The translations under genes were made by a program, and so were the position numbers. A stretch of 64,000 nucleotides of DNA from NCBI RefSeq assembly GCF_963853765.1, contig NC_088860.1, positions 868,001 through 932,000 of the forward strand, in the 5' to 3' direction. This document shows, in pieces, positions 19,201-60,623 of the stretch (its first letter is position 1; each line of letters begins with the position of its first letter). This DNA is from Magallana gigas. Lineage: Eukaryota. Under the pieces are notes generated by a model that saw only the letters and a list, made by a program, of their open reading frames with translations, ran no database searches and had not been told where the DNA came from.

Positions 19201-22200
19201 ATACATAAACTGAATACAATAAACTAAAAAAAAATATCTACACAAATTTTAACTGCCTTGATACTGTTATAGCTGCTGGCACTTTCCCTCCCCAATCACT
19301 GGATGAAGCATTTCTTCCTGGGTCACATTTACCTGGAACTGCAGTTGAATGAGGAGGGACTCAAGATTTACCAACACCTGATGGATAAAGGGTTCGTCAA
19401 GAGTTCCTACATAGTGTCACAGGTTGCCATGGCTTACAACAACATGAGAGGTAGGTCCTCTGTTGTATGAGGTGCTTTGATAGACATCGGTATTGGTCTT
19501 GATTTGTGTCAGGTGATTTAATAGACTCGGTATTGGTCTTGATTTGTGCCAGGTGATTTGATTAGCTGAGAGGAGATATAGGCCTAGAGCATTATTATTT
19601 AATATATATTGTATCTCTAAATTGCAATCAAGGAGAGCACTTTGAGATTTCTAGTAACAAATTAGCAAATCTTTGATATTAAGATTATGAATTATCATGA
19701 TAACTCCAACCCTGGCTGAAAAAAACTATCCTATTGTAACAATTTACGAATGAATGCAAAAATTGTGCATTTGTAACGAGTGTACGTAATTTTGTACGTA
19801 TTTGATTTTTTTTTCCTTATATATTACGGTAGAACTAATTTAAAAAGTTAGTGTAAATGTTGTTTTTGTTGATGGCTTTTCAATATTGGTCTAATATTTC
19901 AAGATACTGGTTTATTTACTGGTGTGGTGTAGACTGAACCACATCATGTATTTTCCTGTGTGTAGCAGTTTGTATATTGTGGTATGGATATTGTGCGAGT
20001 GACTGTTTGTATGAGTATAGAGCAGCCTGGAGGTTCCCTGTGATCTGTTGACAGATCCCCAGGATCTCCCAGGAGATGTCTCTGAGTAGATCAGGTACAT
20101 ACAGTCCCCGATCATGGTGGGCTAGGACCTGTAGCTCATCTAGAGCTGCTTGTGATAATGGTGTATCAATGTGTCTGTAACACAAGAACTCTAGGAAATG
20201 TAACATTACAAACACTGGGATCACTAATATAGAACATCTGTTCTGTAGAGCAGACTGTTGTTCTGGTATTAGTTCACTGATATAACAGATTCTGTTTTCA
20301 AGTGTGATATTCCTTGCTACAGCCTGTCTCATCTTTGTAAAGCAGGACTGTCCCCCTACAGCCTCAGTATACCTCTCTGTGTCTACATGTCTATACAACA
20401 GATATGGCTGTGCTAACTTGACCTTTGTCATCTCTATAACAGATAAAGCTTCCCTGTATCTGAGTGTCTTGTAATAATACATGGCAATGTACAACATGTC
20501 AGATATACACCCAAACTTGGCTGCTAATTTCAGCATGTGACAGGACAGTTTGTCTGCAATATACATCTGTTTGTTGACACCTGTGTGTATGTATTCGTTG
20601 TGTAATGTAAAGGATATACTCTGAAATATGAAGGCTGTAAGTCTCTGTATTGTAAGAGCTTGATAGTGTGTCAGGGGTGATTCTACCAACTGTTCTATTG
20701 TGTGTATGTATTTGTTATGGCTATTTGTCCTTATTGCAGCAATGTAAGAGGTCTCTTTAACAAGTTCTACATCATAATCAACTTCACTCCTCATTAATCT
20801 CTCATCTGTACAAATAAAAAGTCTAGGATTGTACAGGACATCAATGATGTAGGACCTGATAGAGGAACTCTGTAACAGACAGGCCAGACCTTTCTTGTAC
20901 AGTTCATGTAACTGTAGGAACAATCTGTTTTGTGCTGGTCCATAGACCTTTGTCAAAAACATGTTGTTTTGTGGGATGAAAAAGTTCGGACAAACTCCCT
21001 CAGACACCCATTTAAGTAGGAGTTTAAAGCAGACCCAGAAACCGGCCAGGAGATTTTGTGGACACCAGTGAGGTAGTGTGTTTTGTTGAATGGCCCAGAA
21101 AACGGTTGTCTTCATGTGATAGGAACACAACAGTTTATTGGTTTCTTCTAACTGATGATTTATTACTTCCTTTAGGAAAAGTTTTAACAACCCATATGTT
21201 AAAAATTGACTGTGGTTCATTGAATACACAAGTTTATATTCTGCCAGAGAAAAAGAAATTCTCCACGCTATGTTTTCATTTGGTCCTAATGGGTGTCCTA
21301 TTGCTACAAAATGACACCCATTTCTGACAATATCATGAACAACTTCAGGATCAGGCCATGAGTGACATCTATCTATCCATGAGGAGGCAGACAGAGGCCA
21401 AAAGTCACAAACAAAACAGAGGGCAGTGTCATATTCTACTCCTCCTAGTACACCACTACCACAGGGTCCATGTACAGTAGAATTAGGCATTGATGCTGAA
21501 CAAGTTAACTGTCTCCATATAGAACTAGATATATAGACTCTGCCATTCATTCTGACACATGCTGATTGGACATCTCTGTCAGTTGTTGGTGTCAGTAACT
21601 GAAGTAAAGTGAATCCTGGTGGACTCTCAGAACTATCAGAGAGAATCAAGGTTGTATTGGCTGTGTTGTAATACTCAGACTGAGACATGTCCATGATCAC
21701 CCGGTGGTTGTTTGGCCAGAACATGATGTCCAGATCTGATCCCTTCAGTCTGAACCCTTCTCTGTAACTTCCACTCACCATCTTGATGAACGCATCATTA
21801 GGTGTCACTCGTCTGAACACCATCTCCCTGATGTCCTGTGTCTCCCTCCTGATAGCCACCTGTTGTGAGGTCCCCACTATCTCACACAGTCCCACAAACA
21901 CTGACTCTGACATGTTCTGGAGTCCCTCATATCTATATTATTGTTATTTTTTGAAATATATACTTCTATCATTTTTATTCTTAATCAATTATTCCATTAA
22001 CAAAATTGAAAACATTATTATAGTTTATATAATAATAAAAAGAGGATACTGATGAATGTATGATGTACTTACGTTTCGTGAGGAAAGGACTCCATATTAA
22101 TTATAAGGAAGTCAAACAACTGTGGAAATATTTTTTTCTTTTTTTAAGTGCTGGGGTTTTTTTTTTTTTGGGGGGGGGTGTACTTTCATTTTGTGTCATT

Positions 22201-34393: not shown

Positions 34394-37300
34394 GTAGGTC
34401 CTCTATTGTGGTATTAAATGACTTTTATAAGGACTTTATTGAGGAGCATGACAAGTTTTACCTAGCTTTCAGTTTCTTTGATCTCATGGAATATGACAAG
34501 GCAGCCCTCTCTGTCCAAGACTGTAAGAACAAAAAAACATACTATCTTAACATGTATGGCAGGTACCTGGCTGATGAAAAGAGAAAATTAGACAATGCTC
34601 CGGATTCATTTGGTAAAGTTGTCAGTCAGTTGTTTTGTTAACAGTCATAGACAGTCAATTGATAGATTTTCCCATGTTTCTGTGATTTTATTGAAATTAG
34701 CAGTTTTCTGTCAAAGCTGTATCTAAAATGATACAGGTTATGAACATTAAATGAATGTTCCTTTCTTTCAAGGTCCTCCAGACAAATTAGAGAATGGACA
34801 CCTTAAAACTCTGAAAACAGAACTAGCCAAGAAGTATGCCATCACGGAACTGGATGGATTCTGTATCTATCTGTAAGTTAGTAGCAGTTTCTACTTGTAG
34901 GTAAAAGTATTAAAGGGGCATGGTCACTACTTTTGTCAAATTTTATTTTTCACTTTTTAAGGTAAGGTTTGCAGCTTGCATTTTTTAGGAATAGTACCAA
35001 AGTTATATACCATTTTGTTAAGTGTACTAAAGCCTTTTTTCTTATAAAATTCAAATGATTTTGCCAGACCCATTTTATAGCTACAAAAGGTCAAAGTTCA
35101 TGATTTCAAACTGTCAGGTTGATGAAATGTAAATACTAGTAGTTTTGTGAAAAATGTACGTTTTATATGGAACAAATATGGGTGTTATTTATGCTGAAAA
35201 TGTTCGAAAATAATGTCACTATATTATGATTGATTTGTCGTAATTTCCAATAAACTATTTAAGAAAAAAAGTATGTGTTTTCGTGAATGTTGCAGAATAA
35301 CCTCCGAGGTCGAGAAATGTTTTGAAATATAACAGACGAGACATTGGCCGATGCTTTTATATTTCAAACAACATTTCGAGACCGAGGAACATTCACAATA
35401 ACAAGAACTTTATTTCTGTTCTACTAACAGCCCAGTATTTCTACAGATCATTTCTCCTATGTCAAGGTCCGACATTTTGAGGACTGTTCGGAATCCGTGT
35501 AACCACAACAGTTTTGTTAGTAATGTTACATGTTTATCGATCAAAGGAATCACATGCAGACGACAGAATCTTTCTTTGGATTTTTAATACTCTTCACTTA
35601 TTTGTAAAATATTTGCGAATCACATGCCTAATTTTTATAGGGCAATTATTACTACTTCACGTTATATATTTTATGTAAAAACATGCAGTGAAAATGTGCT
35701 AGGGAGGTCCTAGGAACAGCTGCATTGGTCCCTTAAAAATAAACATTTGAGGCAAAACACATCATTTTGACTGGAATTAACACGTGAAATCGACGCAGTT
35801 TTAAAACTTTTTACGGTTTGAAGTTGTACTCTCATGGTCAGTGCGAGACAAATAGGTATTACTGATCTGATAATTTACTGATGACGTTCATGGTATATTG
35901 GAGAATAATGTCCGCGACATCTCTTTGATCTCGGCAAAAACTTTAGTAGAATAAAAATTAAGTAGAATTATCTTAGTATATGTGCAATCTAGTGTTTCTA
36001 AAACACTATTGAAAACCATATGTTGCGAACTTCATTTTTGTGTAAATCGATAAAATGCATGTTTCTTTTTGATTTTTCAATGTAAACTAGAAACCCCGTG
36101 AAATAAAAAAAACTGAAATCAAATATAATGTCATATAAATTTTTACGTCATATTGGAAATATTAAAGGGTAATTGGTGTTACATCAAAATGAAAATCTGA
36201 GAGTTATCTCCCTGTAAAAATGCTTTAGTAATGCATTTCTAATGTTCAACCAAAATTTGAGTGAGAGTCATTGAGTTATAAGCGAGTTACAGATATCACA
36301 ATTCTTTGTTATGTACAGTTATAAGTAATGATGTGATGATGTAAGTTATTTTTGAAGCTGGTTTTTATATCTGCTGATTCTTTTTTAACATTTTGAACAA
36401 ACATTTCCTCTGTTTGTCGCATTCATTGAAGGTCGAAATCTGGAATTTTTTTTCAGCATTAAGATGTAAACAATGACATTACCTGAGCTTTGTTTACATA
36501 ACAATGAATTGTGGGCTCTGTATCTCGCTTACAACTTAACGACCGACATTCATGTGTTGGTTACTTTTAGAAATGCCTAACAGAATCATTGTAAACATAA
36601 AAAAAACAGGAAAATAAATTTTGCCCCAAACCGTAACCATGCTCCTTTTAATTTGTGAGACAGATCACTCGGTGACAGTTGTCTGAACGTAAGTCAATAT
36701 AAAGTAGCTATCAAAAACAAAATCTTTATAAATTGAAAATGATGATTTTTCTATTAATTCTGTATGGAATTTTATTTTGCAGGTACGGTGTGGTGTTGAA
36801 AAAGCTGGATTTACTGAAAGAAGCTATAGAAGTGTTTGTTGATGCGGTGAACTCTGAACCACTGCACTAGGGGGCGTGGTTAGAACTAGTGACCCTCATC
36901 AAAGACAAAGAGTCTGTGAGTTATCTCCCTTATATTGGTTAGAACTAGTGACGCTCATCAAAGACAAGGAGTCATTGAGTTATCTCCCTTATACTGGTTA
37001 GGACTAGTGACTCACCAAAGACAAGAAGTCAGTGAGTTATCTCCCTTATATTGGTTAGGACCAGTGACACTCATCAAAGACAAGGAGTCTGTGAGTTATC
37101 TCCCTTATATTGGTGTGAACTAGTGACACTCATCAAAAACATGGAGTCTGTGAGTTATCTCCCTTATATTGGTTAGAACAAGTGACCCTCATCAAAGACA
37201 AGGAGTCTGTGAGTTATCTCTCTTTTATTAATAAACTGATTTGATTAGATCTCAATTCCACACAGAAAATAATTTTTTACAATCTTTTAACTAACTACAG

Positions 37301-37737
37301 TAAATTGATTTAAGCAATCTTTAATACATTGATACCATTACTGAATACATGCATAACAAACCGTCAGATGCCTTGATTCTTTTGTAGCTGATATGTTACC
37401 ATCTCTTTTAACTACAGTAGTTTGATTTTAAGCAATCTTAAACACAGTAATACATAAACTGAATTCAATTAACTGAAAATAAATATCTACACAAATTTTA
37501 ACTGCCTTGATACTGTTAAAGCTGCTGGCACTTTCCCTCCCCAATCACTGGATGAAGCATTTCTTTCAGGGTCACATTTACCTGGAACTGCAGTTGAATG
37601 AGGAGGGACTCAAGATTTACCAACACTTGATGGATAAAGGGTTCGTCAAGAGTTCCTACATTGTGTCACAGGTCGCCATGGCTTACAACAACATGAGAGG
37701 TAGGTCCTCTGGTGTACGAGGTGCTTTGATAGACATC

Positions 37738-43330: not shown

Positions 43331-45660
43331 GCCTACAGACAAGCTATAGGTTAGTGAGGCCTTAAGACAGGCTATAGGTTAGTGAGGTTTACAGACAGGC
43401 TATGGGTTAGTGAGGTCTACAGACAGGCTATAGGTTAGTGAGGTCTACAGAGAGGCTATGGGTTAGTGAGGTCTACAGACAGGCTATAGGTTAGTGAGGT
43501 CTACAGACAGGCTATGGGTAAGTGAGGTCTACAGACAGGCTATAGGTGAGTGAGGTTTACAGACAGGCATGGGTTAGTTAGGTCTACAGACAGGCTATAG
43601 GTTAGTGAGGTCTACAGACAGGCTATAGGTTAGTGAGGTCTACAGACAGGCTATGGGTAAGTGAGGTCTACAGACAGGATATAGGTGAGTGAGGTCTACA
43701 GACAGGCTATAGGTGAGTGAGGTCTACAGACAGGCTATAGGTTAGTGAAGTATACAAACAGGCTATGGGTTAGTGAGGTCTACAGACAGGCTATAGGTTA
43801 GTGAGGCCTACAGACAGGCTATAGGTTAGTTAGGTGTACAGACAGGCTATGGGTTAATTAGGTCAACAGACAGGCTATAAGTTAGTGAGGTCTACAGACA
43901 GGCTATGGGTTAGTGAGGTCTACAGACAGGCTATTGGTTAGTGAGGTCTACACACAGGCTATTGGTTAGTGAGGTCCTCAGACAGGCTATAGGTTAGTGA
44001 GGTCTACAGACAGGCTATAGGTTAGTGAAGTCTACAGACAGGCTATTGGTTAGTGAGGTCTACAGACAAGCTATAGGTTAGTGAGGACTACAGACAGGCT
44101 AAAGGTTAGTGAGGTCTACAGACAGGCTATAGGTTAGTGAGGTCTACAGACAGGCTATAGGTAAGTGAGGTCTACAGACAGGCTATAGGTGAGTGAGGTC
44201 TACAGACAGGCTATATGTTAGTGAAGTATACAGACAGGCTATGGGTTAGTGAGGTCTACACACAGGCTATAGGTTAGTGAAATCTACAGACAGGCTATAG
44301 GTTAGTGAGGTCTACAGACAGGCTTGGGTTAGTGAGGTCTACAGACAAGCTATAGGTTAGTGAGGTCTACAGACAGGCTACAGGTTAGTGAGGTCTAGAG
44401 ACAGGCTATGGGTTAGTTAGGTCTACAGACAGGCTATAGGTTAGTGAAGTATACAGAAAGGCTATTGGTTAGTGAGGCCTACAGACAGGCAATAGGTTAG
44501 TGAAGTCTACAGACAGGCTATAGGTTAATGAGGTCTACAGACGGGATATGGGTTAGTGAGGTCTACAGACAGGCTATAGGTTAGTGAGGTATACAGACAG
44601 GCTATAGGTTAGTGAGGTTTACAGACAGGCTATAGGTTAGTGAGGTCTACAGACAGGCTATAGGTGAGTGAGGTCTACAGACAGGCTATAGGTTAGTGAA
44701 GTCTACAGACAGGCTATAGGTTAGTGAAGTATACAGACAGGCTATGGGTTAGTGAGGTCTACAGACAGGCTATAGGTTAGTGAGGCCTACAGACAGGCTA
44801 TAGGTTAGTTAGGTGTACAGACAGGCTATGGGTTAGTGAGGTCTACTGACAGGCTATGGGTTAGTTAGGTCTACAGACAGGCTATAAGTTAGTGAGGTCT
44901 ACAGACAGGCTATGGGTTAGTGAGGTCTACAGACAGCCTTTTGGTTAGTGAGGTCTACACACAGGCTATTGGTTAGTGAGGTCCTCAGACAGGCTATAGG
45001 TTAGTGAGGTCTACAGACAGGCTATAGGTTAGTGAAGTCTACAGACAGGTTATTGGTTAGTGAGGTCTACAGACAGGCTATTGGTTAGTGAGGTCTACAG
45101 ACAAGCTGTATGTTAGTGAGGTCTACAGACAGGCTATAGGTTAGTGAGGTCTACAGACAGGCTATAGGTAAGTGAGGTCTACAGACAGGCTATAGGTGAG
45201 TGAGGTCTACAGACAGGCTATTGGTTAGTGAGGTATACAGACAGGCTATGGGTTATTGAGGTCTACAGACAGGCTATAGGTTAGTGAAATCTACAGACAG
45301 ACTATAGGTTAGTGAGGTCTACACACAGGCTATAGGTTAGTGAGGTATACAGACAGGCTATGGTTTATTGAGGTCTACAGACAGGCTATAGGTTAGTGAA
45401 ATCTACAGACAGGCTATAGGTTAGTGAGGTCTACAGACAGGCTTGGGTTAGTGAGGTCTACAGACAAGCTATAGGTTAGAGAGGTCTACAGACAGGCTAC
45501 AGGTTAGTGAGGTCTACAGACAGGCTATAGGTAAGTGAAGTCTCGTACAGGCTGTAGGTTAGTGAAGTATACAGATAGGCTATTGGTTAGTGAGATCTAC
45601 AGACAGGCTATCGGTTAGTGAGGTGTACAGACAGGCTATAGGTTAGTGAGGTCTTCAGAC
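43331..45660 (+). repeat. 28-bp exon 9/donor minisatellite expanded to about 83 copies in unit B
   Basis: Same unit as 27050-27660. Confidence 0.93.
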
Positions 45661-48600
45661 ATACTTTTAGGTAAGTAACATGCCTATTGACAGGATAAAT
45701 GTTAATGAGGTTTACAAACAGGCTTTAAGTTTGTTTACGATTTTTAGGTAATAGGATAGGAAGGATAAGTTATCAGATAGGTAGACAATAGGGATGAATT
45801 GGTTTTCAATCAGGCAAGTTGCAATCTTAATTTAAAAACTCAATGCAATAGGCAACACTCATATTTCTTTTTTGGCCTCTCATTAGAGTAATGAGAGCAT
45901 TAGATAGAAAAAATCAATCCTAAAGCACGGATTTAGGCTACCACTATACATATACTTTTTTTCAGAAATCAACATACGAGATTACCGAGCCTGGTATGGT
46001 CTGGGACAGACGTATGAGATCCTTAAAATGCCATTCTATTGTTTATATTACTACAGACAGGCCCAGAAATTAAGGTAGTTGTTTAAATCTTATGATGTTG
46101 TTCTATTGTTTGTATTACTACAGACAGGCCGAGAAATTAAGGTAGATGTTTAAATCTTATGATGCTGTTCTATTGTTTGTATAACTACAGACAGGCCAAA
46201 AAGTTAAGGTTACCATAGATACTTGATTCTAAAAATGTAGATCTGATATATATTATTGTAACCGAATATATTTCCACAAGTAAGGAGGCTTGATAGTTAA
46301 AAAACACATTTACCTTAAAATTTCAATTATTTAGATAAAAAATATAAATATTTTGGTTTTGAAATCAGGGCATTATGTTATTGCAGAGCTTTTAGTCTTA
46401 AGGATATCAATAAAGTCAAAATAGTTGATGTAAATTTGGACTCAAAGTCTTGGAGCAATAAAATACTGTATGAATTATTTTGACATGTAAAAGACATCTT
46501 TTAAAACATCTGTAAGTTTTTGTTCTACAACATACAACATACTTCAAATATACAGATTAAGTTGATTGTAATTTTCAAATTCAATTTTATTCTGACAAAA
46601 ATAAGTGATCAAAATCACTTAAGGTCTTGCACTTCTTACAGTTCTTGCAGTTCTTACACATCTCCAGTTCTAAAGCAGTAGTACGTGGATTTTATTATGA
46701 TTGTTAAGACCTCATTCCCTCGTTTTCTGATTGGTTTTCTTAGGCCAAACGACTCAAGAATGGCCATGGCACTTGGGGAATCTTATGAGAAACTAGAACG
46801 ACTGCAGGAGGCCAAGAAATGCTTCTGGAAGGCCCATGTAGTGGGAGATATGGAAGGAATGGCCCTGATTAAACTCGCAAAGTAAGACACAAGGTCTATT
46901 TAGAATTGGTTTTAATATGTTAAGGGTCTATTAAGATAATGTACAGTGTCTAGTTATCTGTTACGTGAGGTTTTATTGACACATTATAATGTACATTTAC
47001 TGTCTGTTTCAGCTTACATAAAGTCTTTTGACACAGTAAATGTACAGTTACTGTTTGTTTCAGGTTACACCAGGTCTATTGACACAGTAAAATGTACAGT
47101 AACTATCTGTTTCAGGTTACACGAGGTCTATTGACACAGTAAAATGTACAGTAACTATCTGTTTCAGGTTACACGAGGTCTATTGACACAGTAAAATGTA
47201 CAGTAACTATCTGTTTCAGGTTACACGAGGTCTATTGACACAGTAAAATGTACAGTAACTATCTGTTTCAGGTTACACGAGGTCTATTGACACAGTAAAA
47301 TGTACAGTAATTATCTGTTTCAGGTTACACAAGGTCTATTGACACAGTAAAATGTACAGTAACTATCTGTTTCAGGTTACACGAGGTCTGTTGACACAGT
47401 ATAATGTACAGTAACTATCTGTTTTAGGTTACACGAGGTCTGTTGACACAGTATAATGTACAGTAACTATCTGTTTGAGGTTACACAAGGTTTATAGACA
47501 CAGCATAGTGTACAGTAACTTTCCTTTTGGTTATATAAATTCTATTGACACAGTATAACATACAGTAATTTTCTGTTTCAGGTTACATGAGCGCCTAAAT
47601 GAGGAGGACCAAGCAGCCTCAGCATACACCGAGTACATCAACGAGGCCAACAGAATGGGGGTCAGTAGATCACAGCAAGATCAAAGGTCACATTTGTGTG
47701 AAGTGTTTGTGATGTTGACCTACATTTTGTACAGTTAGATTTGTTCAAACTGTGTTCCTAACAGAGACTGATATTTTGCCACATTATAAAAAACACATAT
47801 AGAGATATGAGGTTATATAGATCTGACATATTACACGAAACTGGAATGGTATATATATATATCTCTTACATCGTATGTAGGTTTGACATATTATATGATC
47901 TGTTTTAAAGGTATAACATGTTATTTATATGGTTCTGATAATTGAAATACAGATCTATCATGTTAAAAATAAATATGAGTTCTATAGATCTTATATGTTA
48001 TTTAGGTATGTTAGATAGGGTTATTATATAGATCTGTTATATAGACACACTGTTAATTTACAGACCTTTAATGCTGAGTATGAGCATCAAGTTTACAAGT
48101 ACTTAACTACTATATACTGTAGATAGGACATGTTATATAGACATGTTATATAATTATGCATGTTACATAGATATGTTGTATATAGACCCACTGATTTTTT
48201 ACAGACGTTCAGTGCAGAGGATCAGAGTCAAGCCTACAAGTACCTGGCTAACTATCACCTGTTGAGGAACAACCTAGATGATGCTTACGCTGCCGCCCAG
48301 AAGTGTACAGAGTTCCCCGAGGTTAGAGTCCGAGTTTGTCTCATTACACCGCATCATTGGAAATTCTCATTGATTTTAATTCTGTCTAATTACATCTTAT
48401 TCATTTGATAATCCCAAAACACTTTCATATCGAATTATCTAGACATTCCTAATCAACATCCTCCAGTTCTTATTTTTTCTCTAGATACTTTAGTATTCTG
48501 TAATGCTATAATATACAGTGTTATTTATGCTATCGATATTTACTTATCCAATTGACCAAAGTAAAGATTAGGCTCTCTTTTGACATAAATTTACAATTAG

Positions 48601-50689
48601 ATGAATTTAGTGAATGAATGAATACAAAGAGAGAAGATTACCCTGTTTTATAGTAGCAGTTTGTACTAGTCTAGTAAAAGTATATCTTCCCAATTGTTCC
48701 ATTATACTAATATATTGATATTTGTAATTTACACTATTACATGTGTATTTACAGAGGAGAGAGGAGGCCAAGGGAATCCTTAAAGATATCCAGAACAGGC
48801 GGGCCAGGAGTGAGGGGGCGTACCCCCACCCAGTCAGGATGGATGACAGCCTGGGCTCCATCTGTCCCGACCCCCTCAACATCAGCACCAGGACCCCCTC
48901 CGTGTGTCTCTCCCCCGTCAATCTCAAGTTTGATATCGGCGACGACTGACCAGGAACTATTTTACAGTGTGTTCATAGACTGACTGACAACAAGCTTTTT
49001 GCCATTGTGATGAATTGGTCATCTATTGTGTTTGTGTAGTCCTGATAAGATTCAGTTGGGTTACCTAGCTCACATGATGGTTCATTGTAATCAACCAGAC
49101 AAGAACTGTGCAATCTTCTCACAGTATGTACTGACCCTGTAGTTTATTATGACACCAGAGGTCTGTTCAGCAGAGTTAACACTGTAACTATTGTGTTATA
49201 GAAAGAGGGAAATACGGGGAGTTGTGCTAACCTGGCCTCAGTTGTGATTTGATTTATAAATTGTTTCAATAAAATGGTTGAATGTTTCGATAAAACAGCC
49301 CATTCTTGTCACAGATGGTTATTGACTTCATGGAATCTTACAGTATCAACTAATAAATGCTATGTGGTCCTTATTGTTGTATAAATTTTTCTCTCGACTA
49401 TCTTAGTTTCTTGTATTTTCGTACACAACTAAAATCACTGGGTTTATTTTGGAATTATTTTGAACTTAATTCACATGCACACTTGTTATAGCTATTCATC
49501 TAATTTTAAGAAAAAGACCTCCCCAAATAAATCTACGATATAAACTTAGTTACCACCATGATTGTATGACCTGTGCTTTAATTCTTTGATGGTCATTTTG
49601 AATTTGAAAATACTGTAATATCTCTATATTTTGTGTGCCATACATTTGCACCCTAAAAAGTAGGGTGGCTCCATAACTAATAAAAAGATTAATGATTTTG
49701 TATTATGTAGATCAGTCTTTTTACATGAAATACTAGTAGTCTGTTAGACATTTTTGTATTATCTGATATAAGAAAAGAAAACATAAGAGACATATTTTGA
49801 AGACATTACACAGCGTACATGTTGCTAGTCTCAATCTTATATAATAATTACTTCCCTGTAGAAGTGTTATCTTCCTTAATTTCTTGTGTGTGGTATAAAA
49901 TAAGCATTTAAAAGTGACGAGACTTCTCAGAATACTACTGCATTTAGATGAAGTGTCAGGGAAGGATACACAGGATGTCCCTCCTAGGCTCTTTTTTGGT
50001 TAAAGTTATAATGTAACAGCTGTATATAAAATAGTTAATATGGGGATAATGTGTGGAATAAATATATAAGCAAGAGAATATTAAACTATGAACACACTTC
50101 GGTAATTCATGCGCCATGTGCACAAATATAAACATCTCCACGTGTTTTGAGTATATTTATTTTTGTAAGATTAAATAAAATCGTTCAATCTTACATAACC
50201 AATTTGACATGTACTTTTGAAAAACAATCATTAATATATTTACATTTTCAACTGTCGTTGTCTGTGATAACATTACAAATCAATTTTGAACTCTAAAACC
50301 CTATCCTATCTAATAACTACTTCACTTTTGAAGTGTTCTAGCTCTTCCTTAATTTCTTGTGTGTGATATATAATAAGCATTTAAAAGTGACTAGACTTCT
50401 CAGAATACTGCTGTATTTAAATGAAGTGTCAGGGAAGGATACACAGGATGTTCCGCCTAGGTTCTATATTGGTTACAGTCATAATGTAACACACCTGTAT
50501 ATAAGATAGTAAACATGGGGATAGAATGAAATCGATACATAACCTAGAAAATATTAAAATATAAAACAGTTCCAATACTGTTTCAACAATAGACGTTTGT
50601 GAAGTTTTGAAATGCACTTACATAGTTACAGGAAAACTTGCTAATTCAGTGGATCAAAGTTGGACATAATTTCTTGGGCAAGAACTAGT

Positions 50690-51059
50690 AACTCATTAAA
50701 GACAAAGAGTTAATGAGTTACCTCCTTTTTAATAAAAATGTAGATTTTTATTCCATAATTTATTACATAATCTTTTAAATATAGTAACTGTTATTTGATT
50801 TGAAACAATCTTTAATACATTATTTGATACGATAACTGAACAATTTAAACTAATTTTATCAAATATCTGTTCTACTGTTTTAGCTGCTTGCAATTTCCCT
50901 CGCCAATCATTGGATGAAACATTTCTTTCTGGGTGACATTTACCTTGTACTGCAGTTGAATGAGGAGGGACTCAAGATTTACCAACACCTGATACATAGG
51001 GATTGTCAAGAGTTCCTTCATTGTGTCATAGGTTGCCATGGCTGACAACAACATGAGAG
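50690..51059 (+). pseudogene. CDC23: Second orphan exon 5-end / exon 6 fragment fused to exon 3 of unit C
   Basis: Exon-6 homologue 50884..51059 (176 bp), same 38-bp junction to exon 3 as at 34394-34431. Confidence 0.83.
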
Positions 51060-54000
51060 GTAGGTCCTCTGTTGTGGTATTAAATGACTTTTATATGGAC
51101 TTTATTGAGGAGCATGACAAGTTTTATCTAGCTTTCAGTTTCTTTGATCTCATGGAATATGACAAGGCAGCCCTCTCTGTCCAAGACTGTAAGAACAAAA
51201 AAACATACTATCTTCACATGTATGGCAGGTACCTGGCTGATGAAAAGAGAAAATTAGACAATGCTCCGGATTCATTTGGTTAAGTTGTCAGTCAGTTGTT
51301 TTGTTAACAGTCATAGACAGTCAATTGATAGATTTTCCCATGTTTCTGTGATTTTATTGAAATTAGCAGTTTTCTGTCAAAGCTGTATCTAAAATGATAC
51401 AGGTTATGAACATTAAATGAATGTTCCTTTCTTTCAAGGTCCTCCAGACAAATTAGAGAATGGACACCTTAAAACTCTGAAAACAGAACTAGCCAAGAAG
51501 TATGCCATCACGGAACTGGATGGATTCTGTATCTATCTGTAAGTTAGTAGCAGTTTCTACTTGTAGGTAAAAGTATTAAAGGGGCATGGTCACTACTTTT
51601 GTCAAATTTTATTTTTCACTTTTTAAGGTAAGGTTTGCAGCTTGCATTTTTTAGGAATAGTACCAAAGTTATATACCATTTTGTTAAGTGTACTAAAGCC
51701 TTTTTTCTTATAAAATTCAAATGATTTTGCCGGACCCATTTTATAGCTACAAAAGGTCAAAGTTCATGATTTCAAACTGTCAGGTTGATGAAATGTAAAT
51801 ACTACCGGTAGTAGTTTTGTGAAAAATGTACGTTTTATATGGAACAAATATGGGTGTTATTTATGCTGAAAATGTTCGAAAATAATGTCACTATATTATG
51901 ATTGATTTGTCGTAATTTCCAATAAACTATTTAAGAAAAAAAGTATGTGTTTTCGTGAATGTTGCAGAATAACCTCCGAGGTCGAGAAATGTTTTGAAAT
52001 ATAACAGACGAGACATTGGCCGATGCTTTTATATTTCAAACAACATTTCGAGACCGAGGAACATTCACAATAACAAGAACTTTATTTCTGTTCTACTAAC
52101 AGCCCAGTATTTCTACAGATCATTTCTCCTATGTCAAGGTCCGACATTTTGAGGACTGTTCGGAATCCGTGTAACCACAACAGTTTTGTTAGTAATGTTA
52201 CATGTTTATCGATCAAAGGAATCACATGCAGACGACAGAATCTTTCTTTGGATTTTTAATACTCTTCACTTATTTGTAAAATATTTGCGAATCACATGCC
52301 TAATTTTTATAGGGCAATTATTACTACTTCACGTTATATATTTTATGTAAAAACATGCAGTGAAAATGTGCTAGGGAGGTCCTAGGAACAGCTGCATTGG
52401 TCCCTTAAAAATAAACATTTGAGGCAAAACACATCATTTTGACTGGAATTAACACGTGAAATCGACGCAGTTTTAAAACTTTTTACGGTTTGAAGTTGTA
52501 CTCTCATGGTCAGTGCGAGACAAATAGGTATTACTGATCTGATAATTTACTGATGACGTTCATGGTATATTGGAGAATAATGTCCGCGACATCTCTTTGA
52601 TCTCGGCAAAAACTTTAGTAGAATAAAAATTAAGTAGAATTATCTTAGTATATGTGCAATCTAGTGTTTCTAAAACACTATTGAAAACCATATGTTGCGA
52701 ACTTCATTTTTGTGTAAATCGATAAAATGCATGTTTCTTTTTGATTTTTCAATGTAAACTAGAAACCCCGTGAAATAAAAAAAACTGAAATCAAATATAA
52801 TGTCATATAAATTTTTACGTCATATTGGAAATATTAAAGGGTAATTGGTGTTACATCAAAATGAAAATCTGAGAGTTATCTCCCTGTAAAAATGCTTTAG
52901 TAATGCATTTCTAATGTTCAACCAAAATTTGAGTGAGAGTCATTGAGTTATAAGCGAGTTACAGATATCACAATTCTTTGTTATGTACAGTTATAAGTAA
53001 TGATGTGATGATGTAAGTTATTTTTGAAGCTGGTTTTTATATCTGCTGATTCTTTTTTAACATTTTGAACAAACATTTCCTCTGTTTGTCGCATTCATTG
53101 AAGGTCGAAATCTGGAATTTTTTTTCAGCATTAAGATGTAAACAATGACATTACCTGAGCTTTGTTTACATAACAATGAATTGTGGGCTCTGTATCTCGC
53201 TTACAACTTAACGACCGACATTCATGTGTTGGTTACTTTTAGAAATGCCTAACAGAATCATTGTAAACATAAAAAAAACAGGAAAATAAATTTTGCCCCA
53301 AACCGTAACCATGCTCCTTTTAATTTGTGAGACAGATCACTCGGTGACAGTTGTCTGAACGTAAGTCAATATAAAGTAGCTATCAAAAACAAAATCTTTA
53401 TAAATTGAAAATGATGATTTTTCTATTAATTCTGTATGGAATTTTATTTTGCAGGTACGGTGTGGTGTTGAAAAAGCTGGATTTACTGAAAGAAGCTATA
53501 GAAGTGTTTGTTGATGCGGTGAACTCTGAACCACTGCACTAGGGGGCGTGGTTAGAACTAGTGACCCTCATCAAAGACAAAGAGTCTGTGAGTTATCTCC
53601 CTTATATTGGTTAGAACTAGTGACGCTCATCAAAGACAAGGAGTCATTGAGTTATCTCCCTTATACTGGTTAGGACTAGTGACTCACCAAAGACAAGAAG
53701 TCAGTGAGTTATCTCCCTTATATTGGTTAGGACCAGTGACACTCATCAAAGACAAGGAGTCTGTGAGTTATCTCCCTTATATTGGTGTGAACTAGTGACA
53801 CTCATCAAAAACATGGAGTCTGTGAGTTATCTCCCTTATATTGGTTAGAACAAGTGACCCTCATCAAAGACAAGGAGTCTGTGAGTTATCTCTCTTTTAT
53901 TAATAAACTGATTTGATTAGATCTCAATTCCACACAGAAAATAATTTTTTACAATCTTTTAACTAACTACAGTAAATTGATTTAAGCAATCTTTAATACA

Positions 54001-54409
54001 TTGATACCATTACTGAATACATGCATAACAAACCGTCAGATGCCTTGATTCTTTTGTAGCTGATATGTTACCATCTCTTTTAACTACAGTAGTTTGATTT
54101 TAAGCAATCTTAAACACAGTAATACATAAACTGAATTCAATTAACTGAAAATAAATATCTACACAAATTTTAACTGCCTTGATACTGTTAAAGCTGCTGG
54201 CACTTTCCCTCCCCAATCACTGGATGAAGCATTTCTTCCTGGGTCACATTTACCTAGAACTGCAGTTGAATGAGGAGGGACTCAAGATTTACCAACACCT
54301 GATGGATAAAGGGTTCGTCAAGAGTTCCTTCATTGTGTCACAGGTCGCCATGGCTTACAACAACATGAGAGGTAGGTCCTCTGGTGTACGAGGTGCTTTG
54401 ATAGACATC

Positions 54410-55218
54410 GGTATTGGTCTTGATTTGTGTCAGGTGATTTAATAGACTTGGTATTGGTCTTGATTTGTGTCAGGTGATTTAATAGACTCAGTATTGGTCT
54501 TGATTTGGTTCAGGTGATTTGATAGGCTGAATGTTGGTCTTGATTTGAGCCAGGTGATTTGATAGGCTGAGTGTTGGTCTTGATTTGAGCCAGGTGATTT
54601 GATATGCTGAATGTTGGTCTTGATTTGTGTCAGGTGATTTAATAGACTCGGTATTGGTCTTGTTTTGTGCCAGGTGATTTGATAGGCTGAATGTTGATCC
54701 GGTATTGGTCTTGATATGTCAGGTGAATTGATAGACTCGGTATTGGCCTTGATTTGGTTCAGGTGATTTGATAGGCTGAATGTTGGTCTTGATTTGGTTC
54801 AGGTGATTTGATAGGTTGAGTGTTTGTCTTGATTTGGTTCAGGTGATTTGATAGGCTGAATGTTGGTCTTGATTTGAGCCAGGTGATTTGATAGGCTGAG
54901 TGTTGGTCTTGATTTGGTTCAGGTGATTTGATAGGTTGAGTGTTTGTCTTGATTTGGTTCAGGTGATTTGATAGGCTGAATGTTGGTCTTGATTTGAGCC
55001 AGGTGATTTGATAGGCTGAGTGTTGGTCTTGATTTGAGCCAGGTGATTTGATAGGCTGAGTGTTGGTCTTGATTTGAGCCAGGTGATTTGATAGGCTGAT
55101 TGTTGGTCTTGATTTGGTTCAGGTGATTTGATAAACTGAGTATTGTTCTTGATTTGGTTCAGGTGATTTGATAGACTCAGTATTGGTCTTGATTTGTGCC
55201 AGGTGATTTGATAGGCTG
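54410..55218. repeat. 40-bp minisatellite, about 20 copies
   Basis: Homologue of 37738-38466 with nearly the same order of unit variants. Confidence 0.9.
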
Positions 55219-55566
55219 AGAGGAGATATAGGCCTAGGGCATTATAATTTGATATATATTGTATCTTTAAATTGCAATCAAGGAGAGCACTTTGAGATTT
55301 CTAGTAATAAATTAGCAAATCCTTGATATTAAGATTATGAATTATCATAATAATTCCAACACTGGCAGAAAAAAAAAACTATCCTTTTGTAACAATTTAC
55401 GGATGAATGCAAAAAATGTACAATTGTAAGGAGTGTCATTGTGTACGTATTTGAATTTTTTTCCTTATATATTACTACAGTAGAACTAATTAAAAAAGTT
55501 AGTGTAAATGTTGTTTTTGTTGATGACTTCTCAATCTTGGTCTAATATTCCACCATACTGGTTTAT

Positions 55567-57740
55567 TTACTGGTGTGGTGTAGACTGAACCATATCATGT
55601 ATTCTCCTCTGTGTAGCAGTTTGTATTCTGTTCATTGGATGCTGTGTGAGTGACTGTTGGTATGAGTATAGAGCAGCCTGGAGGTTCCCTGTGATCTGTT
55701 GACAGATCCCCAGGATCTCCCAGGAGATGTCTCTGGATAGATCATATATATACATTCCCTGATCATGGTGGACTAGGACCTGTAGCTCATCTACAGCTGC
55801 TTGTGATAATGTCATATCAATGTGTCTGTGACACAAGAACTCTAGGAAGTGTAACATTACAAACACTGGGATATCTAATGTATACTCTCTGTTCTGTAGA
55901 GCAGACTGTTGTTCTGGTATTAGTTCACTGATATAACAGATTGTGTTGTCAAGTCTGATATCCTGTGCTACAGCCTGTCTCATCTTTGTAGACCAGGACT
56001 GTCCCCCTACAGCCTCAGTATACCTCTCTCTGTCTACATATCTATAATACATCAGATATGGCTGTGCTAACTTGACCTTTGTCATCTCTATAACAAATAA
56101 AGCTTCCCTGCATCTGAATGTCTTGTAATAATACATGGCAATGTACAACATGTCAGATACACACCCAAACTTGGCTGCTAATTTCAGCATGTGACATGAC
56201 AGTTTGTCTGCAATATACATCTGTTTGTTGACACATATGTTGTGCAATGTAAAGGCAGTAATCTGAAATATGAAGGCTGTAAGTCTCTGTAATATAACAG
56301 CTTGATAGTGTGTCAGGGGTGACTCTACCAACTGTTCTATTATGTGTATGTATTTGTTATGGCTATTTGTACTACTTTCAGCAATGTAAGAGGTCGCTTT
56401 AACAAGTTCTACATCATAATCAACTTCACTCCTCATTAATCTTTCATCTGTACAAATAGAAAGTCTAGGATTGTACAGGACATTAATGATGTAGGACCTG
56501 ATAGAGGAACTCTGTAACAGACAGGCCAGACCTTTCTTGTACAGTTCATGTAACTGTAGGAACAATCTGTTTTGTGCTGATCCATAGACCTTTGTCAGAA
56601 ACAGGTTGTTTTGTGGGATGAAAAAGTTCGGACAAACTCCCTCAGACACCCATTTAAGTAGGAGTTTAAAGCAGACCCAGAAACCGGCCAGGAGATTTTG
56701 TGGATGCCAGTGAGGTAGTGTGTTTTGTTGAATGGCCCAGAAAACGGTTGTCTTCATGTGATAGGAACACAACAGTTTATTGGTTTCTTCTAACTGATGA
56801 TTTATGACTTCCTTTAGGAAAAGTTTTAACAACCCATATGTTAAAAATTGACTGTGGTTCATTGAATACACAAGTTTATATTCTGCCCGAGAAAAAGAAA
56901 TTCTCCACTCTAGGTTTTCATTTGGTCCTAATGGGTGTCCTATTGCTACAAAGTGACACCCATTTCTGACAATATCATGAACAACTTCAGGATCAGGCCA
57001 TGAGTGACATCTGTCTATCCATAAAGAGGCAGATGGAGGCCAAAAGTCACAAACAAAACAGTGGGCAGTGTCATATTCTAATCCCCCATAATTACCACTA
57101 CCACAGGGTCCATGTACGGTAGAATTAGGAATTAATGCCGAACAAGTTAACTGTCTGTATATTGAACTAGATATATAGACTCTGCCATTCATTCTGACAC
57201 ATGCTGACTGGACGTATCTGTTTATTCGTGGTGTCAGTAACTGAAGTAAAGTGAATCCTGGTGGACTCTCAGAACTGTCAGAGAGAATCAAGGTTGTACT
57301 GGCTGTGTTGTAATACTCAGACTGAGACATGTCCATGATCACTCGGTAGTTGTTATACCATAACATAAAGTCCACATCTGATCCATTCAGTCTAAATCCT
57401 TCTCTGTGACTTCCACTAATCATCTTAATGAGCCCATCATACGATATCACTTGTCTCCTCACCATCTCCCAGATGTCCTCTGTCTCCCTCCTCAGGGCCA
57501 CCTGTTGTGAGGTTCCAACTATCTCACACAGTCCCACAATCACCGACTCAGACATGTGCTGGAGTCCTTCATATCTATATTATTATTATTTTGAAATATA
57601 TACTTTTATCATTTTATTCTTAATCAATTATTTCATGAACAAAATTGAAAACTTTATTATAGTATATACATGTATAATAATAAAAAGAGGATACTGATAA
57701 ATGTATGATGTACTTACGTTTCGTGAGGAAAGGACTCCAT
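55567..57740 (-). CDS. cGAS-like receptor (cGLR), copy C
   Basis: 662-aa ORF 55567..57555 with SGSHREGFRLNGSDVDFM and LEYD. First exon complement(57718..57740), exon 2 starting at 57574 ([18 protein letters not shown]...). Confidence 0.92.
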
Positions 57741-60623
57741 ATTAAATGTAAGGAAGTCAAACAACTGTGGAAATATTTAATCTTTTTTTGGGTGCTGGGT
57801 TTTTTTTTGGGGGGGGGGGGGTGTACTTTCATTTTGTGTCGTTATCCTAGAATTTTTTTTAAGTGCAAAGACATGTGACTCAAAATAATGGACTATAAAG
57901 TAATCTATAGTTAAGGCTTGTATCTTAAAGATCAACAATTTTTATAAAGATGGTCCTCAAGTATAAACTTTTTAAAACACTGTGCGGTTGCCTTGTTTAA
58001 AGTTTAATTAAATCGATGGGAATGTTTTTTTTTTTTTTTACAAACTTCTGGAAAAAAGCAGACAGAAAATAGATTTGCTAGCAAGTAGATTTCCTAAAAT
58101 ATCATGATTAAAATCTGAATGAATATAATTTTAGTCAGGTACTTTTTTTGCACACAGTCAATTAAGCTATTTTTACTGCGCTCATTTTTAAATTGATTGT
58201 TCAATGCAGTCATAATATGTGTAATGAAAAAGAAATAATATCAACAGAAAAAATTAATTTATGCCATGAAAAGAACTAAGTTTTATTCGTTTAGAATGTA
58301 ATTAATTTGGATGTTATGATTGTGACGGCCATTTTCTGTAAAATTGACCAGGAGGAAAACTCCCATTAAAGAGTATGAGAAAATATAAATAATATATTTA
58401 GCGAGATCAAAGATATTCAATGTACAGCACATTTTAGACATTTTTGTATTGTGCAGTAGTTAATTTAGTGAAATTAGAGAGCTATTTTAGCATTACAAAA
58501 TTCATTCATTTCCATCAAGTCATCAATATTGCTCCTGGGCCACTTTTAGGGGATGGTGGGGTTGGAATAAGGCATAACTTTGGGTAGTTATTTATTTCTA
58601 ATTAGTTGTTAACAAAAAGTGGATATTAAACAATGCATTTTCAAATATACCTGTAATAATTACCTGTAGTATTTTATGCATTTTTACCTTTGTTTGTTGA
58701 CAGAGGTATATATGACAGTCAACGCCTTCACTGAGCTGACAAAGATGGACCCCAACAGACTGGAGAATATGGACTACTTCTCCAATACTCTCTACATCAA
58801 GGTCAGGAGATGCCAAGTCTTGTCCATCAGATTAATCCTTTTTGATTGTGTGTTGAAGTGAAGTGTTGAAGATCTTTGCAATTTTTTTTTCTAGGAAATG
58901 CGGGCTGATTTAGCTCACCTGGCTCACAGGTGTTGTGACATTGACAAATACAGAGAGGAGACCTGTGTTGTTATAGGTAAAGCCTGCTACATGAACATTC
59001 AGTGTTATTTAAAGAGATTGTGGATATTCAAGGATTCACTTAAGATATTTGTTTGTGCCCAAGTGCCTGTTTTGACATAAGGATAGATTCTAAAGCCATT
59101 GTCTGCATCTTAAAAGATGTCGTTTGGCTTCTACAATCTGGCCTCAGGACCCAGATGTGTACAGAGTTCCCTGAGGTCCAAGTCCCAGTTTATCTCATTA
59201 CATTGCATCATTGTGAAGATCTCATTTGATTTTAATTTATTCTTACATTTTATTCATTTGACAGTCTTAAGTTATTTTCATGTCTAAGTATCTAGACATT
59301 CAGAAAAAAAATTTCAATTCATCATCAATTTCTTTTTCAGATATATTGTAAAACCAAAAACTTTCAGTTAATTGTTAGAATATACAGAGATGTTATTACT
59401 CTCAGTTTATCCAATTAACCAGTTTATCCAATTAACCAGTTTATCTAATTAACCAGTTTATCCAAGTCAAAACAAGGTTATCTCTCTTTTGACAGTAATT
59501 TAAAACTGCATGAAATATATCACAGGTAAGTGTGAATGAATGAATACAAAGAGAGAAGAGTACCCAGAATATGGTAACAATTTGTACTATAGTATATTTA
59601 TCAAATTGTTGCATTATACTGATATTTTTGTAATACACATGTATCAAATATTACGTGTGTTTTTACAGAGAGGAAGCCAAGGGAATCCAGAATGGGCGGG
59701 CCAGGAAGCAGGGGCATTACCCCATCCCTAACTTTCATTGTAAACAACCAGATATTGTTACTTTCGAATTGCACAGTCTTGGAATTGCAAGTGGTGGTCT
59801 GGTACTGTGGTTAAACAGGACGACAGACAATGTCTGATCATGGACTTGTTCTGATATAATGGACTTTTTAGGATACATCTGACAAACCATACATTTATTT
59901 ACTTGTCTCTTGTATCATGTGTACAATAAGATTGTTACTGTTATATATATATTTCTCTTGACCATCAACTATTGTTGTAAATAAATCTAACAAAACAAAA
60001 AGCTGCTGTAAATGATGTTCAGATTTATAAAACAGGAGATCCTACTGTTTGCTTTTGGGAAAGCTATTCAGATGTAGAAAATACCTGCTACTCATTTTGT
60101 TGAAGTTATCCCAATCATGGCTTATTTACAGTAATAACATTCAAAATCATAATAATTACAAAAATAATTTATTAGATAATTAATAAATATGATAATTAGA
60201 TATTCCCAATCCATGGACGATAACATCCACAAAAAGACATTAATACCATACACTTCATAACTAGCTGATGTTATGAATTCTACAAATGTTCAGGGGCAGA
60301 CAACTCCTGAGGGTTTATAACTAATCTCCTCCACCACTGGGCATGGCACAAACCTCATCATATCATATACAGTTTCTCTACATCTACAGACCTTCTAGAT
60401 GTGTAAGAAAAATATAGACAATGAGAAATTGGACTCTAGACACTGGCTCACATCCTAGTAAAGGCTAAACAAAGTGTGCTACACAGAATATCTGTTGCTC
60501 CGACTGTGACATCTCGGACTCTCCCTGCATGTTATACAATGTCTAACGGAGCGTGAACAAATCTAGAGATATCACTATCACAGACAGCTGTCCTATATCC
60601 GCCACACAGAGTCAGGCATATCT

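What the first reader, a model, noticed from the sequence alone, without database searches (positions are those of the whole stretch)
19273..59730. Array of three intact cGAS-like receptors amplified inside tandem copies of the essential cell-cycle gene CDC23
Seen: a two-exon cGLR sits antisense in intron 6 of the intact CDC23, and the exon 3-14 segment has been duplicated twice. The extra CDC23 copies carry a shared nonsense codon, splice-site changes, a frameshifted fragment and a large deletion. All three cGLR ORFs stay full length with an intact GS-x10-DxD...D catalytic set. Established: cGLRs are Mab-21 nucleotidyltransferases that make cyclic dinucleotides for STING, and the family is expanded in bivalves. 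Inference: selection retains the passenger immune gene, and the housekeeping host segment is the homologous unit through which copy number changes. I do not know of this arrangement being described.
Basis: partly seen in the sequence, partly recalled or inferred. Interest (0 to 1): 0.9.

Follow-up and report, generated by a model that had tools for sequence, protein, structure and literature searches.

The report
Oyster cGLR array amplified with CDC23 exons
In the Pacific oyster, a cGAS-like immune gene sitting backwards inside an intron of the essential cell-cycle gene CDC23 has been copied three times by unequal crossing-over that drags CDC23 exons along; this is a real and tidy example of how an expanding immune family grows, but not a new kind of system.

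Summary
The window is Magallana gigas, chromosome-scale contig C8. It holds one intact 14-exon CDC23 (588 aa) with a two-exon Mab21/cGLR-like gene antisense in intron 6. Two further tandem units, B and C, each carry an intact paralog.

Exons 3-5 of B and C are dead: they share W187->TAG. A frameshifted exon-6 fragment marks each unit junction. Unit C has lost exons 9-13.

New here:
- Unit B is a recombinant, C-like on the left and A-like on the right, with the switch inside the cGLR-B ORF.
- B's exons 7-14 are not decaying. They encode the same peptide as A. Introns included, they are 99.2-99.8% identical to the working CDC23 of C. angulata, so 3' halves move between the working and spare positions.
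- C. angulata has four or more units, so copy number varies.
- The cGLRs evolve at dN/dS of about 0.65-1.1, yet their ORFs are kept open (P about 1e-4 to 1e-7). Hypervariable sites lie around the active-site loop.
- The proteins combine a cGAS-fold NTase with a TPR-like domain, have pI about 6.5, and belong to a family of at least 386 loci.

The cGLR expansion in bivalves is already published; this locus architecture is a new variant. Interest is moderate.

The parts
7250..31877 (+). Intact CDC23 (APC8), unit A; 14 exons, 588 aa. Exons: e1 7250-7368, e2 8853-8925, e3 11086-11266, e4 12425-12524, e5 15491-15623, e6 19273-19450, e7 26301-26398, e8 26484-26565, e9 26904-27068, e10 27954-28062, e11 28698-28835, e12 29854-29932, e13 31133-31249, e14 31683-31877.
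   Evidence: All splice sites are GT-AG and in phase. ANAPC8 Pfam hits occur only here in the 564-Mb genome. Exon 9 matches human CDC23 residues 339-392 at E=2.5e-26. C. angulata annotates a 588-aa orthologue.
19916..22095 (-). cGLR-A, two coding exons (22095-22073 and 21932-19916), 679 aa; antisense in CDC23 intron 6.
   Evidence: ORF; Pfam Mab-21 and Mab-21_C; exon 1; 100% match to an NCBI M. gigas protein, P0001. AF2 model has pLDDT 92.9, and its N-terminal part superposes on cGAS and Cv-cGLR1. The diagnostic letters of the poly(A) RNA reads are mostly A-type.
33757..50426 (+). Unit B. Junction fragment of exon 6 at 34097-34409. Dead copies: e3 34432-34612, e4 34773-34872, e5 36783-36915 (TAG at 36868-36870), e6 37522-37699. 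Undamaged copies: e7 42584-42681, e8 42765-42846, e9 43185-43349, e10 45966-46074, e11 46744-46881, e12 47582-47660, e13 48205-48321, e14 48755-48949.
   Evidence: Mosaic: 97-100% to unit C up to about 39.7 kb, and 96-100% to A-type sequence from about 40.4 kb. The stretch from e11 to the 3' flank is 99.2-99.8% identical to the A-position CDC23 of C. angulata.
38818..40988 (-). cGLR-B (exon 2 40825-38818, exon 1 CDS 40988-40966), 676 aa. A chimera: the N-terminal ~150 aa come from the A lineage and the C-terminal part from the C lineage.
   Evidence: (P0006). The 140-nt intron is spliced in RNA contigs of two studies. Regional dS: over residues 1-170, A-B 0.100 against B-C 0.174; over the C-terminal part, B-C 0.025 against A-B 0.063. 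Window mosaic.
50426..59728 (+). Unit C (terminal, truncated). Exon-6 fragment 50771-51075; e3 51098-51278 (acceptor TG); e4 51439-51538; e5 53455-53587 (TAG); e6 54194-54371; e7 58704-58801 (4 of 4 changes nonsynonymous); e8 58895-58976; degraded e13/e14 remnant 59150-59728.
   Evidence: The same design is found in C. angulata (L009), where the unit is followed by an ALMS-motif gene.
55567..57740 (-). cGLR-C (exon 2 57574-55567, exon 1 CDS 57740-57718), 676 aa.
   Evidence: (P0010).

Best explanation
This is a copy-number-variable tandem array built by non-allelic homologous (unequal) recombination around a nested gene.

Proposed history:
1. An old, complex duplication placed a second copy of CDC23 exons 3-14, with the antisense cGLR in intron 6, just downstream of the gene. 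The junction is marked by an exon-6 fragment fused to exon 3.
2. That copy decayed. It acquired W187*, many replacements in exon 3, and a deletion of exons 9-13. It is now the terminal unit C.
3. Misaligned pairing of a C-type unit with the working unit A, with a crossover inside the cGLR ORF, produced B-type units. Their left half (dead exons 3-6 plus the cGLR C-terminal domain) comes from C. Their right half (the cGLR N-terminal and active-site region plus a fresh, fully functional-quality copy of CDC23 exons 7-14 and the 3' flank) comes from A.
4. Repeated exchanges of this kind change the unit number (3 in this assembly, 4 or more in C. angulata). They also shuffle cGLR halves into new chimeras and move CDC23 3' halves between the working position and spare positions. 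This movement is why the spare 3' halves look selected.

The cGLRs are cGAS-fold nucleotidyltransferases with a conserved catalytic triad and a C-terminal TPR-like solenoid. Selection keeps them open and diversifies the lobe around the active-site loop, as expected of a fast-evolving immune sensor.

Shown: the anatomy, the mosaic, allele sharing, ORF retention, the fold, and splicing of the cGLR-B intron.
Inferred: the order of events, enzymatic activity, ligand, and signalling through STING.
For: Tandem units and junctions.

Mosaic of unit B, with the switch inside the ORF: with regional dS.

The same B-type and C-type units, the same junction fragment and the same W187* are present in an independent assembly of C. 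angulata. That assembly has units A, B1, B2 and C on one 528-kb contig, and two more non-A units on a second contig.

The right half of gigB is 99.2-99.8% identical to the A-position copy of C. angulata, introns and 3' flank included, but only 76-97% identical to gigA. Exon-14 and exon-11 alleles are swapped between A and B positions.

Decay occurs only where a segment can never rejoin a working gene:
- exons 3-5 of B and C: 17 nonsynonymous to 9 synonymous changes, plus stop codons;
- exons 6-8 of C: 8 nonsynonymous to 3 synonymous, plus loss of a splice donor;
- exon 6 of B-type units: 3 nonsynonymous changes.

cGLR: ORF retention at P=2.5e-7 (six copies) and 1.3e-4 (this window), with in-frame indels only. 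G48, S49, D60, D62 and D162 are at least 90% conserved across homologues of 26-60% identity. The cGAS/Cv-cGLR1/MB21D2 fold is matched with TM 0.66-0.73 by target. Read strandedness fits an antisense nested gene, and the cGLR intron is spliced.
Against: No long read was examined across the junctions in M. gigas. The structure rests on the assembly and on its agreement with C. angulata.

Only two A-position alleles were sampled. B-only variants in exons 7-14 are 11 synonymous to 1 nonsynonymous. That ratio could also mean direct selection on the B copies.

C. angulata annotation calls a 376-aa product from B-type units. An RNA contig carries the TAG-bearing exon 5 and stops exactly at its acceptor with further unaligned letters, as a spliced RNA would. 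So non-A units are transcribed.

B-specific cGLR expression is weakly shown, because most reads cross-map from paralogs.

dN/dS near 1 on its own is also what relaxed constraint would give.
Confidence: 0.72

Rival explanations
1. B-type units are themselves functional for CDC23. Either exons 6-14 encode an expressed N-terminally truncated CDC23 (376 aa, starting at M213), or exons 7-14 serve as an alternative 3' cassette spliced to exons 1-6 of unit A after read-through. On this view direct purifying selection keeps them intact.
For: All splice sites of B e6-e14 are intact, and the peptide from e7-e14 is identical to A. B-only variants in e7-e14 are 11 synonymous to 1 nonsynonymous. NCBI calls a 376-aa TPR gene in three C. 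angulata B-type units. An RNA contig holds the TAG-type exon 5 cut off exactly at its acceptor, so non-A units are transcribed.
Against: gigB's right half is within 0.2-0.8% of a bona fide A-position allele, introns included, so it has been in the B position only briefly. angB1 already carries W386C and an exon-13 donor change GT->GG. Exon 6, which would hold the start codon, shows 3 nonsynonymous B-only changes. Transcripts containing exon 5 carry a premature stop. In RNA run X15 and DNA run X1, the only contig covering the gigB-private exon-6 site 37627 reads the non-B letter.
Confidence: 0.17
2. One reading: only the passenger cGLR is retained. All extra CDC23 sequence is inert and decaying, and serves merely as homology for copy-number change.
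For: Exons 3-5 of B and C, and all of C's CDC23 part, are clearly dead. The cGLR ORFs are retained.
Against: B-type exons 7-14 show no decay in M. gigas and belong to the same allele pool as the working gene. The breakpoint that created B lies within the cGLR ORF.
Confidence: 0.07
3. Assembly artefact: B and C are two haplotypes of one unit laid in tandem.
For: The left halves of B and C are 98-100% identical. Oysters are highly heterozygous. The second C. angulata contig ends inside the array.
Against: B and C differ structurally: B has exons 9-14 and C has a 4.5-kb deletion. The B->C junction repeats the A->B junction. An independent C. angulata assembly has A, B1, B2 and C on one contig, with a B-type unit 96-100% identical to gigB throughout. 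An older C. gigas annotation also lists three close paralogs.
Confidence: 0.03
4. The three cGLR copies are drifting without function, since dN/dS is about 1, and are open only because they are young or are repaired by gene conversion from other paralogs.
For: Overall dN/dS is 0.63-1.13. There are at least 386 related loci that could act as conversion donors.
Against: No stops where about 15 are expected, and only in-frame indels. Catalytic residues are invariant while neighbouring positions are hypervariable. Residues 241-280 have pN/pS 0.10. RNA evidence shows splicing and minus-strand transcription.
Confidence: 0.04

Closest known systems
Bivalve cGLR radiation (Li et al. 2023, PMC9980059): 168 cGLRs listed for C. 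gigas and 225 for C. virginica; a minority of cGLRs carry TPR or ankyrin modules.
   Same: Same superfamily by Pfam, fold and catalytic residues. Same species-level expansion. The NTase-plus-TPR architecture is mentioned there.
   Different: No member of this ~680-aa subfamily has a reported product or ligand. pI is about 6.5, against above 8.5 for the dsDNA/dsRNA sensors. The motif deviates (SGS; 97-residue spacing). Six close paralog accessions were not found in the held supplement, although that file was cut when stored. The nested, host-exon-carrying array is not described there.
Cv-cGLR1 / Cg-cGLR1 (oyster dsDNA-activated cGLRs; PDB 8gjw, 8gjy), human cGAS and MB21D2 (7lt1).
   Same: Best sequence and structure matches, covering the full catalytic-domain fold.
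   Different: Only 15-19% identity. The proteins here have about 320 extra C-terminal residues forming a TPR-like solenoid with no specific structural relative.
Tandem immune-gene arrays that grow and make chimeras by unequal crossing-over (for example plant NLR clusters, KIR/LILR, MHC-linked families); established knowledge, not tested here.
   Same: Copy-number variation between haplotypes, chimeric receptors with breakpoints inside the ORF, diversifying residues.
   Different: Here the repeat unit is about 17 kb of an essential housekeeping gene. Each expansion also copies a working-quality 3' half of that gene.
Conserved nested pair Mab21 within Lrba/Nbea introns (Tsang et al. 2009, cited in PMC10732462).
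   Same: A Mab21-family gene lying antisense in a host-gene intron.
   Different: Different host gene, a different Mab21 clade, and no amplification together with host exons.

Membership tests
cGLR (definition of Li et al. 2023) | cGAS-type nucleotidyltransferase fold (NTase core plus Mab21 C-lobe) | tested here: met
   AF2 pLDDT 92.9. Foldseek probability 1.00 and TM by target 0.66-0.73 to Cv-cGLR1, cGAS, MB21D2 and MAB21L1 over 355-386 columns. Pfam Mab-21 and Mab-21_C above cut-off.
cGLR (definition of Li et al. 2023) | Motif h[QT]GS - X8-20 - [DE]h[DE]h - X50-90 - h[DE]h | tested here: inconclusive
   The sequence here is V-S-G-S, x10, D60-L-D62-I, x97, Y-D162-T. GS, DxD and the third D are present and at least 90% conserved family-wide. 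However, S replaces Q/T and the spacing of 97 exceeds 90.
cGLR (definition of Li et al. 2023) | Ligand-activated synthesis of a cyclic dinucleotide that signals through STING | not testable with these tools
   No biochemical data exist for this subfamily. pI of 6.3-6.8 argues against a classical basic nucleic-acid-binding surface.
CDC23 / APC8 | N-terminal ANAPC8 domain followed by TPR repeats orthologous to human CDC23; complete ORF | tested here: met
   PF04049 hits. Exon 9 matches human CDC23 residues 339-392 at E=2.5e-26, better than CDC27 or CDC16. The 588-aa model has canonical splice sites throughout.
Unprocessed pseudogene (exons 3-5 of B and C; all of C) | Disabling mutations and a neutral nonsynonymous-to-synonymous ratio | tested here: met
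   W187* is shared by all non-A units in two species. A second stop occurs in angC. There is acceptor and donor loss. Counts are 17N:9S and 8N:3S. Exons 9-13 are deleted in C.
Unprocessed pseudogene (unit B exons 7-14) | Disabling mutations and a neutral nonsynonymous-to-synonymous ratio | tested here: not met
   0 nonsynonymous against 11 synonymous differences from A, with all splice sites intact. 99.2-99.8% identity to a working allele.
NAHR / unequal-crossover tandem array | Recombinant unit with a definable breakpoint; copy number differs between haplotypes; identical junctions | tested here: met
   Mosaic of B. 3 units here against 4 or more in C. angulata. The A->B and B->C junctions are alike. 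Long-read confirmation on one molecule was not tested.

The most novel reading that the evidence does not exclude
The spare, undamaged copies of CDC23 exons 7-14 in B-type units may not be by-products. They may be used, either as an interchangeable 3' cassette of an essential gene or as a 376-aa N-terminally truncated APC8 paralog. In that case, amplification of an immune gene would have created a functional variant of a core cell-cycle subunit, with CDC23 integrity mechanically coupled to cGLR copy-number change.
Probability: 0.15. Interest if true: 0.65.

Novelty: new variant of a known kind. Interest (0 to 1): 0.45.

Why it matters
The locus shows, at base-pair resolution, one way a very large invertebrate immune family expands and diversifies. 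Unequal crossovers inside and around a nested gene raise copy number and splice together halves of different paralogs. In this case an N-terminal active-site lobe is joined to a different C-terminal TPR domain.

The locus also shows a hazard and a curiosity. The reciprocal products of such crossovers would truncate an essential gene. The spare 3' halves of CDC23 share an allele pool with the working copy, which gives a natural system for studying selection on gene segments that rotate in and out of function.

For oyster immunity, the locus offers three closely related cGLR-TPR paralogs, one of them a natural chimera, for structure-function work on an uncharacterised cGLR subfamily.

Tried and rejected
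1. I first read the 11 synonymous: 0 nonsynonymous difference between A and B exons 7-14 as long-term purifying selection on an independent B gene. Comparison of non-coding DNA showed that B's right half is a near-copy of another functional allele lineage. I demoted that idea to a rival explanation.

2. The repeat finder on the whole window was swamped by a 28-bp minisatellite. I replaced it with self-BLAST.

3. Read laying could not give copy number or clean paralog-specific expression. The older runs are contigs, and the cGLR region attracts reads from hundreds of paralogs. In the one raw-read run, 305 of 357 laid reads fit only in part. I used only the joints, the strandedness and a few diagnostic letters.

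4. The look-up of encoding contigs for the M. gigas protein P0006 returned nothing, because records of the window's own genome are withheld.

5. Six accession numbers of close paralogs were not found in the Li et al. supplement. That file was truncated when stored, so this says little.

6. Foldseek of the C-terminal domain gave only generic TPR matches with E of 0.02 or worse. No specific homologue can be claimed.

7. Literature searches found no description of this locus.


Full report
**What is there**

The window is G000:C8:868001-932000 of a 564-Mb genome. Protein matches identify the organism as Magallana (Crassostrea) gigas.

Three long minus-strand ORFs of 665, 662 and 662 aa exist at the stated places. 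All match Pfam Mab-21 and Mab-21_C above cut-off. Each has a short upstream coding exon encoding MESFPHET, with a GT..AG intron.

On the plus strand I reconstructed a 14-exon CDC23 of 588 aa with canonical splice sites throughout. ANAPC8 hits occur only in this window in the whole genome. Exon 9 matches human CDC23 residues 339-392 at E=2.5e-26. cGLR-A lies antisense between exons 6 and 7.

**The duplication**

Self-BLAST shows three tandem units: A up to about 33.7 kb, B at 33.76-50.43 kb, and C at 50.43-59.73 kb.
- the same TGG->TAG change in exon 5 of B and C;
- an exon-3 acceptor change AG->TG in C;
- an exon-6 fragment at each junction, with a 2-nt deletion and an in-frame stop, fused about 20 nt upstream of exon 3;
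- in C, a jump from just after exon 8 to a remnant of exon 13/14 at about 65% identity, ending at 59728.

In unit B, exons 7-14 keep every splice site. They differ from A at 11 positions, all synonymous.

I first took this for selection on an independent gene. C. angulata supported that reading at first: its annotation calls a 376-aa TPR product (CDC23 from M213 in exon 6) around the orthologous cGLR.

I then fetched the C. angulata array. It has units A, B1, B2 and C on one 528-kb contig and two further non-A units on a second contig. It shows the same junction fragment and the same W187*.

Comparing non-coding DNA settled the matter. From exon 11 to the 3' flank, gigB is 99.2-99.8% identical to the A-position copy of C. 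angulata but only 76-97% identical to gigA. Exon-11 and exon-14 alleles are also swapped between A and B positions across the assemblies.

So the synonymous-only differences are differences between two functional allele lineages. B's right half was copied from, or exchanges with, a working CDC23 3' half.

Segments that can never rejoin a working gene decay neutrally:
- exons 3-5 of B and C: 17N:9S, plus stops;
- exons 6-8 of C: 8N:3S, plus donor loss;
- exon 6 of B-type units: 3 nonsynonymous changes.

B-only variants in exons 7-14 are 11S:1N. With only two A-position alleles sampled, I cannot fully exclude direct constraint on B, and I keep that as a rival at 0.17.

**How B arose**

A 300-bp window scan shows unit B is 97-100% identical to C-type units from its start to about 39.7 kb. 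From about 40.4 kb it is 96-100% identical to A-type sequence. The switch falls inside the cGLR-B ORF, at roughly residues 150-350.

Regional dS agrees. Over the N-terminal 170 aa, A-B is 0.100 against B-C 0.174. Over the C-terminal part, B-C is 0.025 against A-B 0.063.

This is the product expected from unequal crossing-over between a C unit and an A unit. It also means that the cGLR itself, not only host DNA, supplied the homology for the crossover.

**Is the array real?**

B and C differ structurally, the two junctions are alike, and an independent assembly contains a B-type unit 96-100% identical to gigB along its whole length. A haplotype-in-tandem artefact is therefore unlikely (0.03). 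No long read was inspected.

**The cGLRs**

Pairwise dN/dS is 0.63-1.13 overall. It reaches 1.25-1.95 for the C-terminal domain between A-type and B/C-type copies, and it is 0.10 for residues 241-280.

The ORFs are nevertheless protected. Six copies show at least 312 substitutions. About 14.9 stops are expected and none is seen (P=2.5e-7). For the three copies in this window, P=1.3e-4. Flanking DNA has 0.106 indels per substitution, mostly not multiples of three, whereas the ORFs have three indels, all in frame.

Variation concentrates at residues 21-80, which cover the long N-terminal helix, the first strand, and the position right after G48-S49; that position alone has 8 residue types in 11 sequences. 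It also concentrates at 101-120 and 141-165. Residues 181-380 are conserved. This agrees with note s1-381051.

G48, S49, D60, D62 and D162 are at least 90% conserved in 45 sequences reaching down to 26% identity.

The AF2 model is confident (pLDDT 92.9, pTM 0.90). Its first 350-380 residues superpose on Cv-cGLR1, cGAS, MB21D2 and MAB21L1.

The last ~320 residues form a TPR-like solenoid (pLDDT 90.4). It gives only generic TPR matches.

pI is 6.3-6.8, unlike the basic dsDNA/dsRNA-sensing cGLRs described by Li et al..

**Expression**

In a stranded poly(A) run, the orientation of reads fits minus-strand RNA over the cGLR and plus-strand RNA over CDC23 exons.

The 140-nt cGLR intron of unit B is spliced in RNA contigs of two studies. 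An exon 6->7 GT..AG joint is seen. One RNA contig carries the TAG-type exon 5 and ends exactly at its acceptor.

Most cGLR reads cross-map from paralogs. The diagnostic letters are mainly A-type, with a minority of B/C-type letters. Expression of B and C is therefore suggested, not proven.

**Context and novelty**

The family has at least 386 Mab-21_C loci in this genome, mostly open frames of 650-710 aa and often in arrays. It has 3,737 cluster representatives in public data.

Li et al. list 168 cGLRs for C. gigas and mention TPR-bearing cGLRs. So the expansion and the architecture are known.

I found no paper describing this locus.

What is new:
- the nested-gene array built on partial copies of an essential gene;
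- the natural chimeric paralog;
- the shared allele pool between the working and spare CDC23 3' halves.

I rate it a new variant of a known kind, with moderate interest.

Noticed in passing
window 15585-16425 and 18246-18952 (CDC23 intron 5); copies at 36877-37229 and 53549-53901: A 59-bp minisatellite whose unit contains the 3' end of exon 5 and its GTGAGT donor. The repeated reading frame is '...[21 protein letters not shown]'. Intron 5 therefore carries dozens of decoy copies of the exon-5 donor.
   Followed up: no
window 26910-27770 (intron 9 of A) and 43190-45735 (unit B): A 28-bp minisatellite that starts right after exon 9. It is about 0.85 kb in A and about 2.5 kb in B.
   Followed up: no
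window 41550-42550 (between the cGLR-B 5' end and exon 7): Very high word depth in DNA and RNA runs, up to about 1e5, with many loose ends. This is probably a high-copy transposable element in the shared cGLR/exon-7 intergenic space.
   Followed up: no
window 28698-33400 versus L007 (C. angulata A-position): Two working CDC23 alleles (gigA and angA) differ by 2-25% in introns and 3' flank but by synonymous changes only in exons. This is very deep allelic divergence at an essential gene.
   Followed up: partly
cGLR ORFs 19916-21913, 38818-40806, 55567-57555: The transition:transversion ratio among the six cGLR copies is below 1 (107:125), which is unusual for neutral change.
   Followed up: no
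G000:C9:3681802-3698160 and many other places: Other arrays of the same ~680-aa Mab21 family have much shorter periods, about 4.1 kb. This suggests that most arrays amplify without host-gene exons.
   Followed up: no
window 1-1989, 9357-10959, 62058-63239: Further long minisatellites with 44-bp, 40-bp and 34-bp units flank and interrupt the locus.
   Followed up: no
L009:1-5802 (C. angulata); collinear with the window beyond about 59.3 kb: The gene downstream of the array in C. angulata is a 2830-aa ALMS-motif protein. The window region 59.3-64 kb is 90-98% collinear with that flank.
   Followed up: partly
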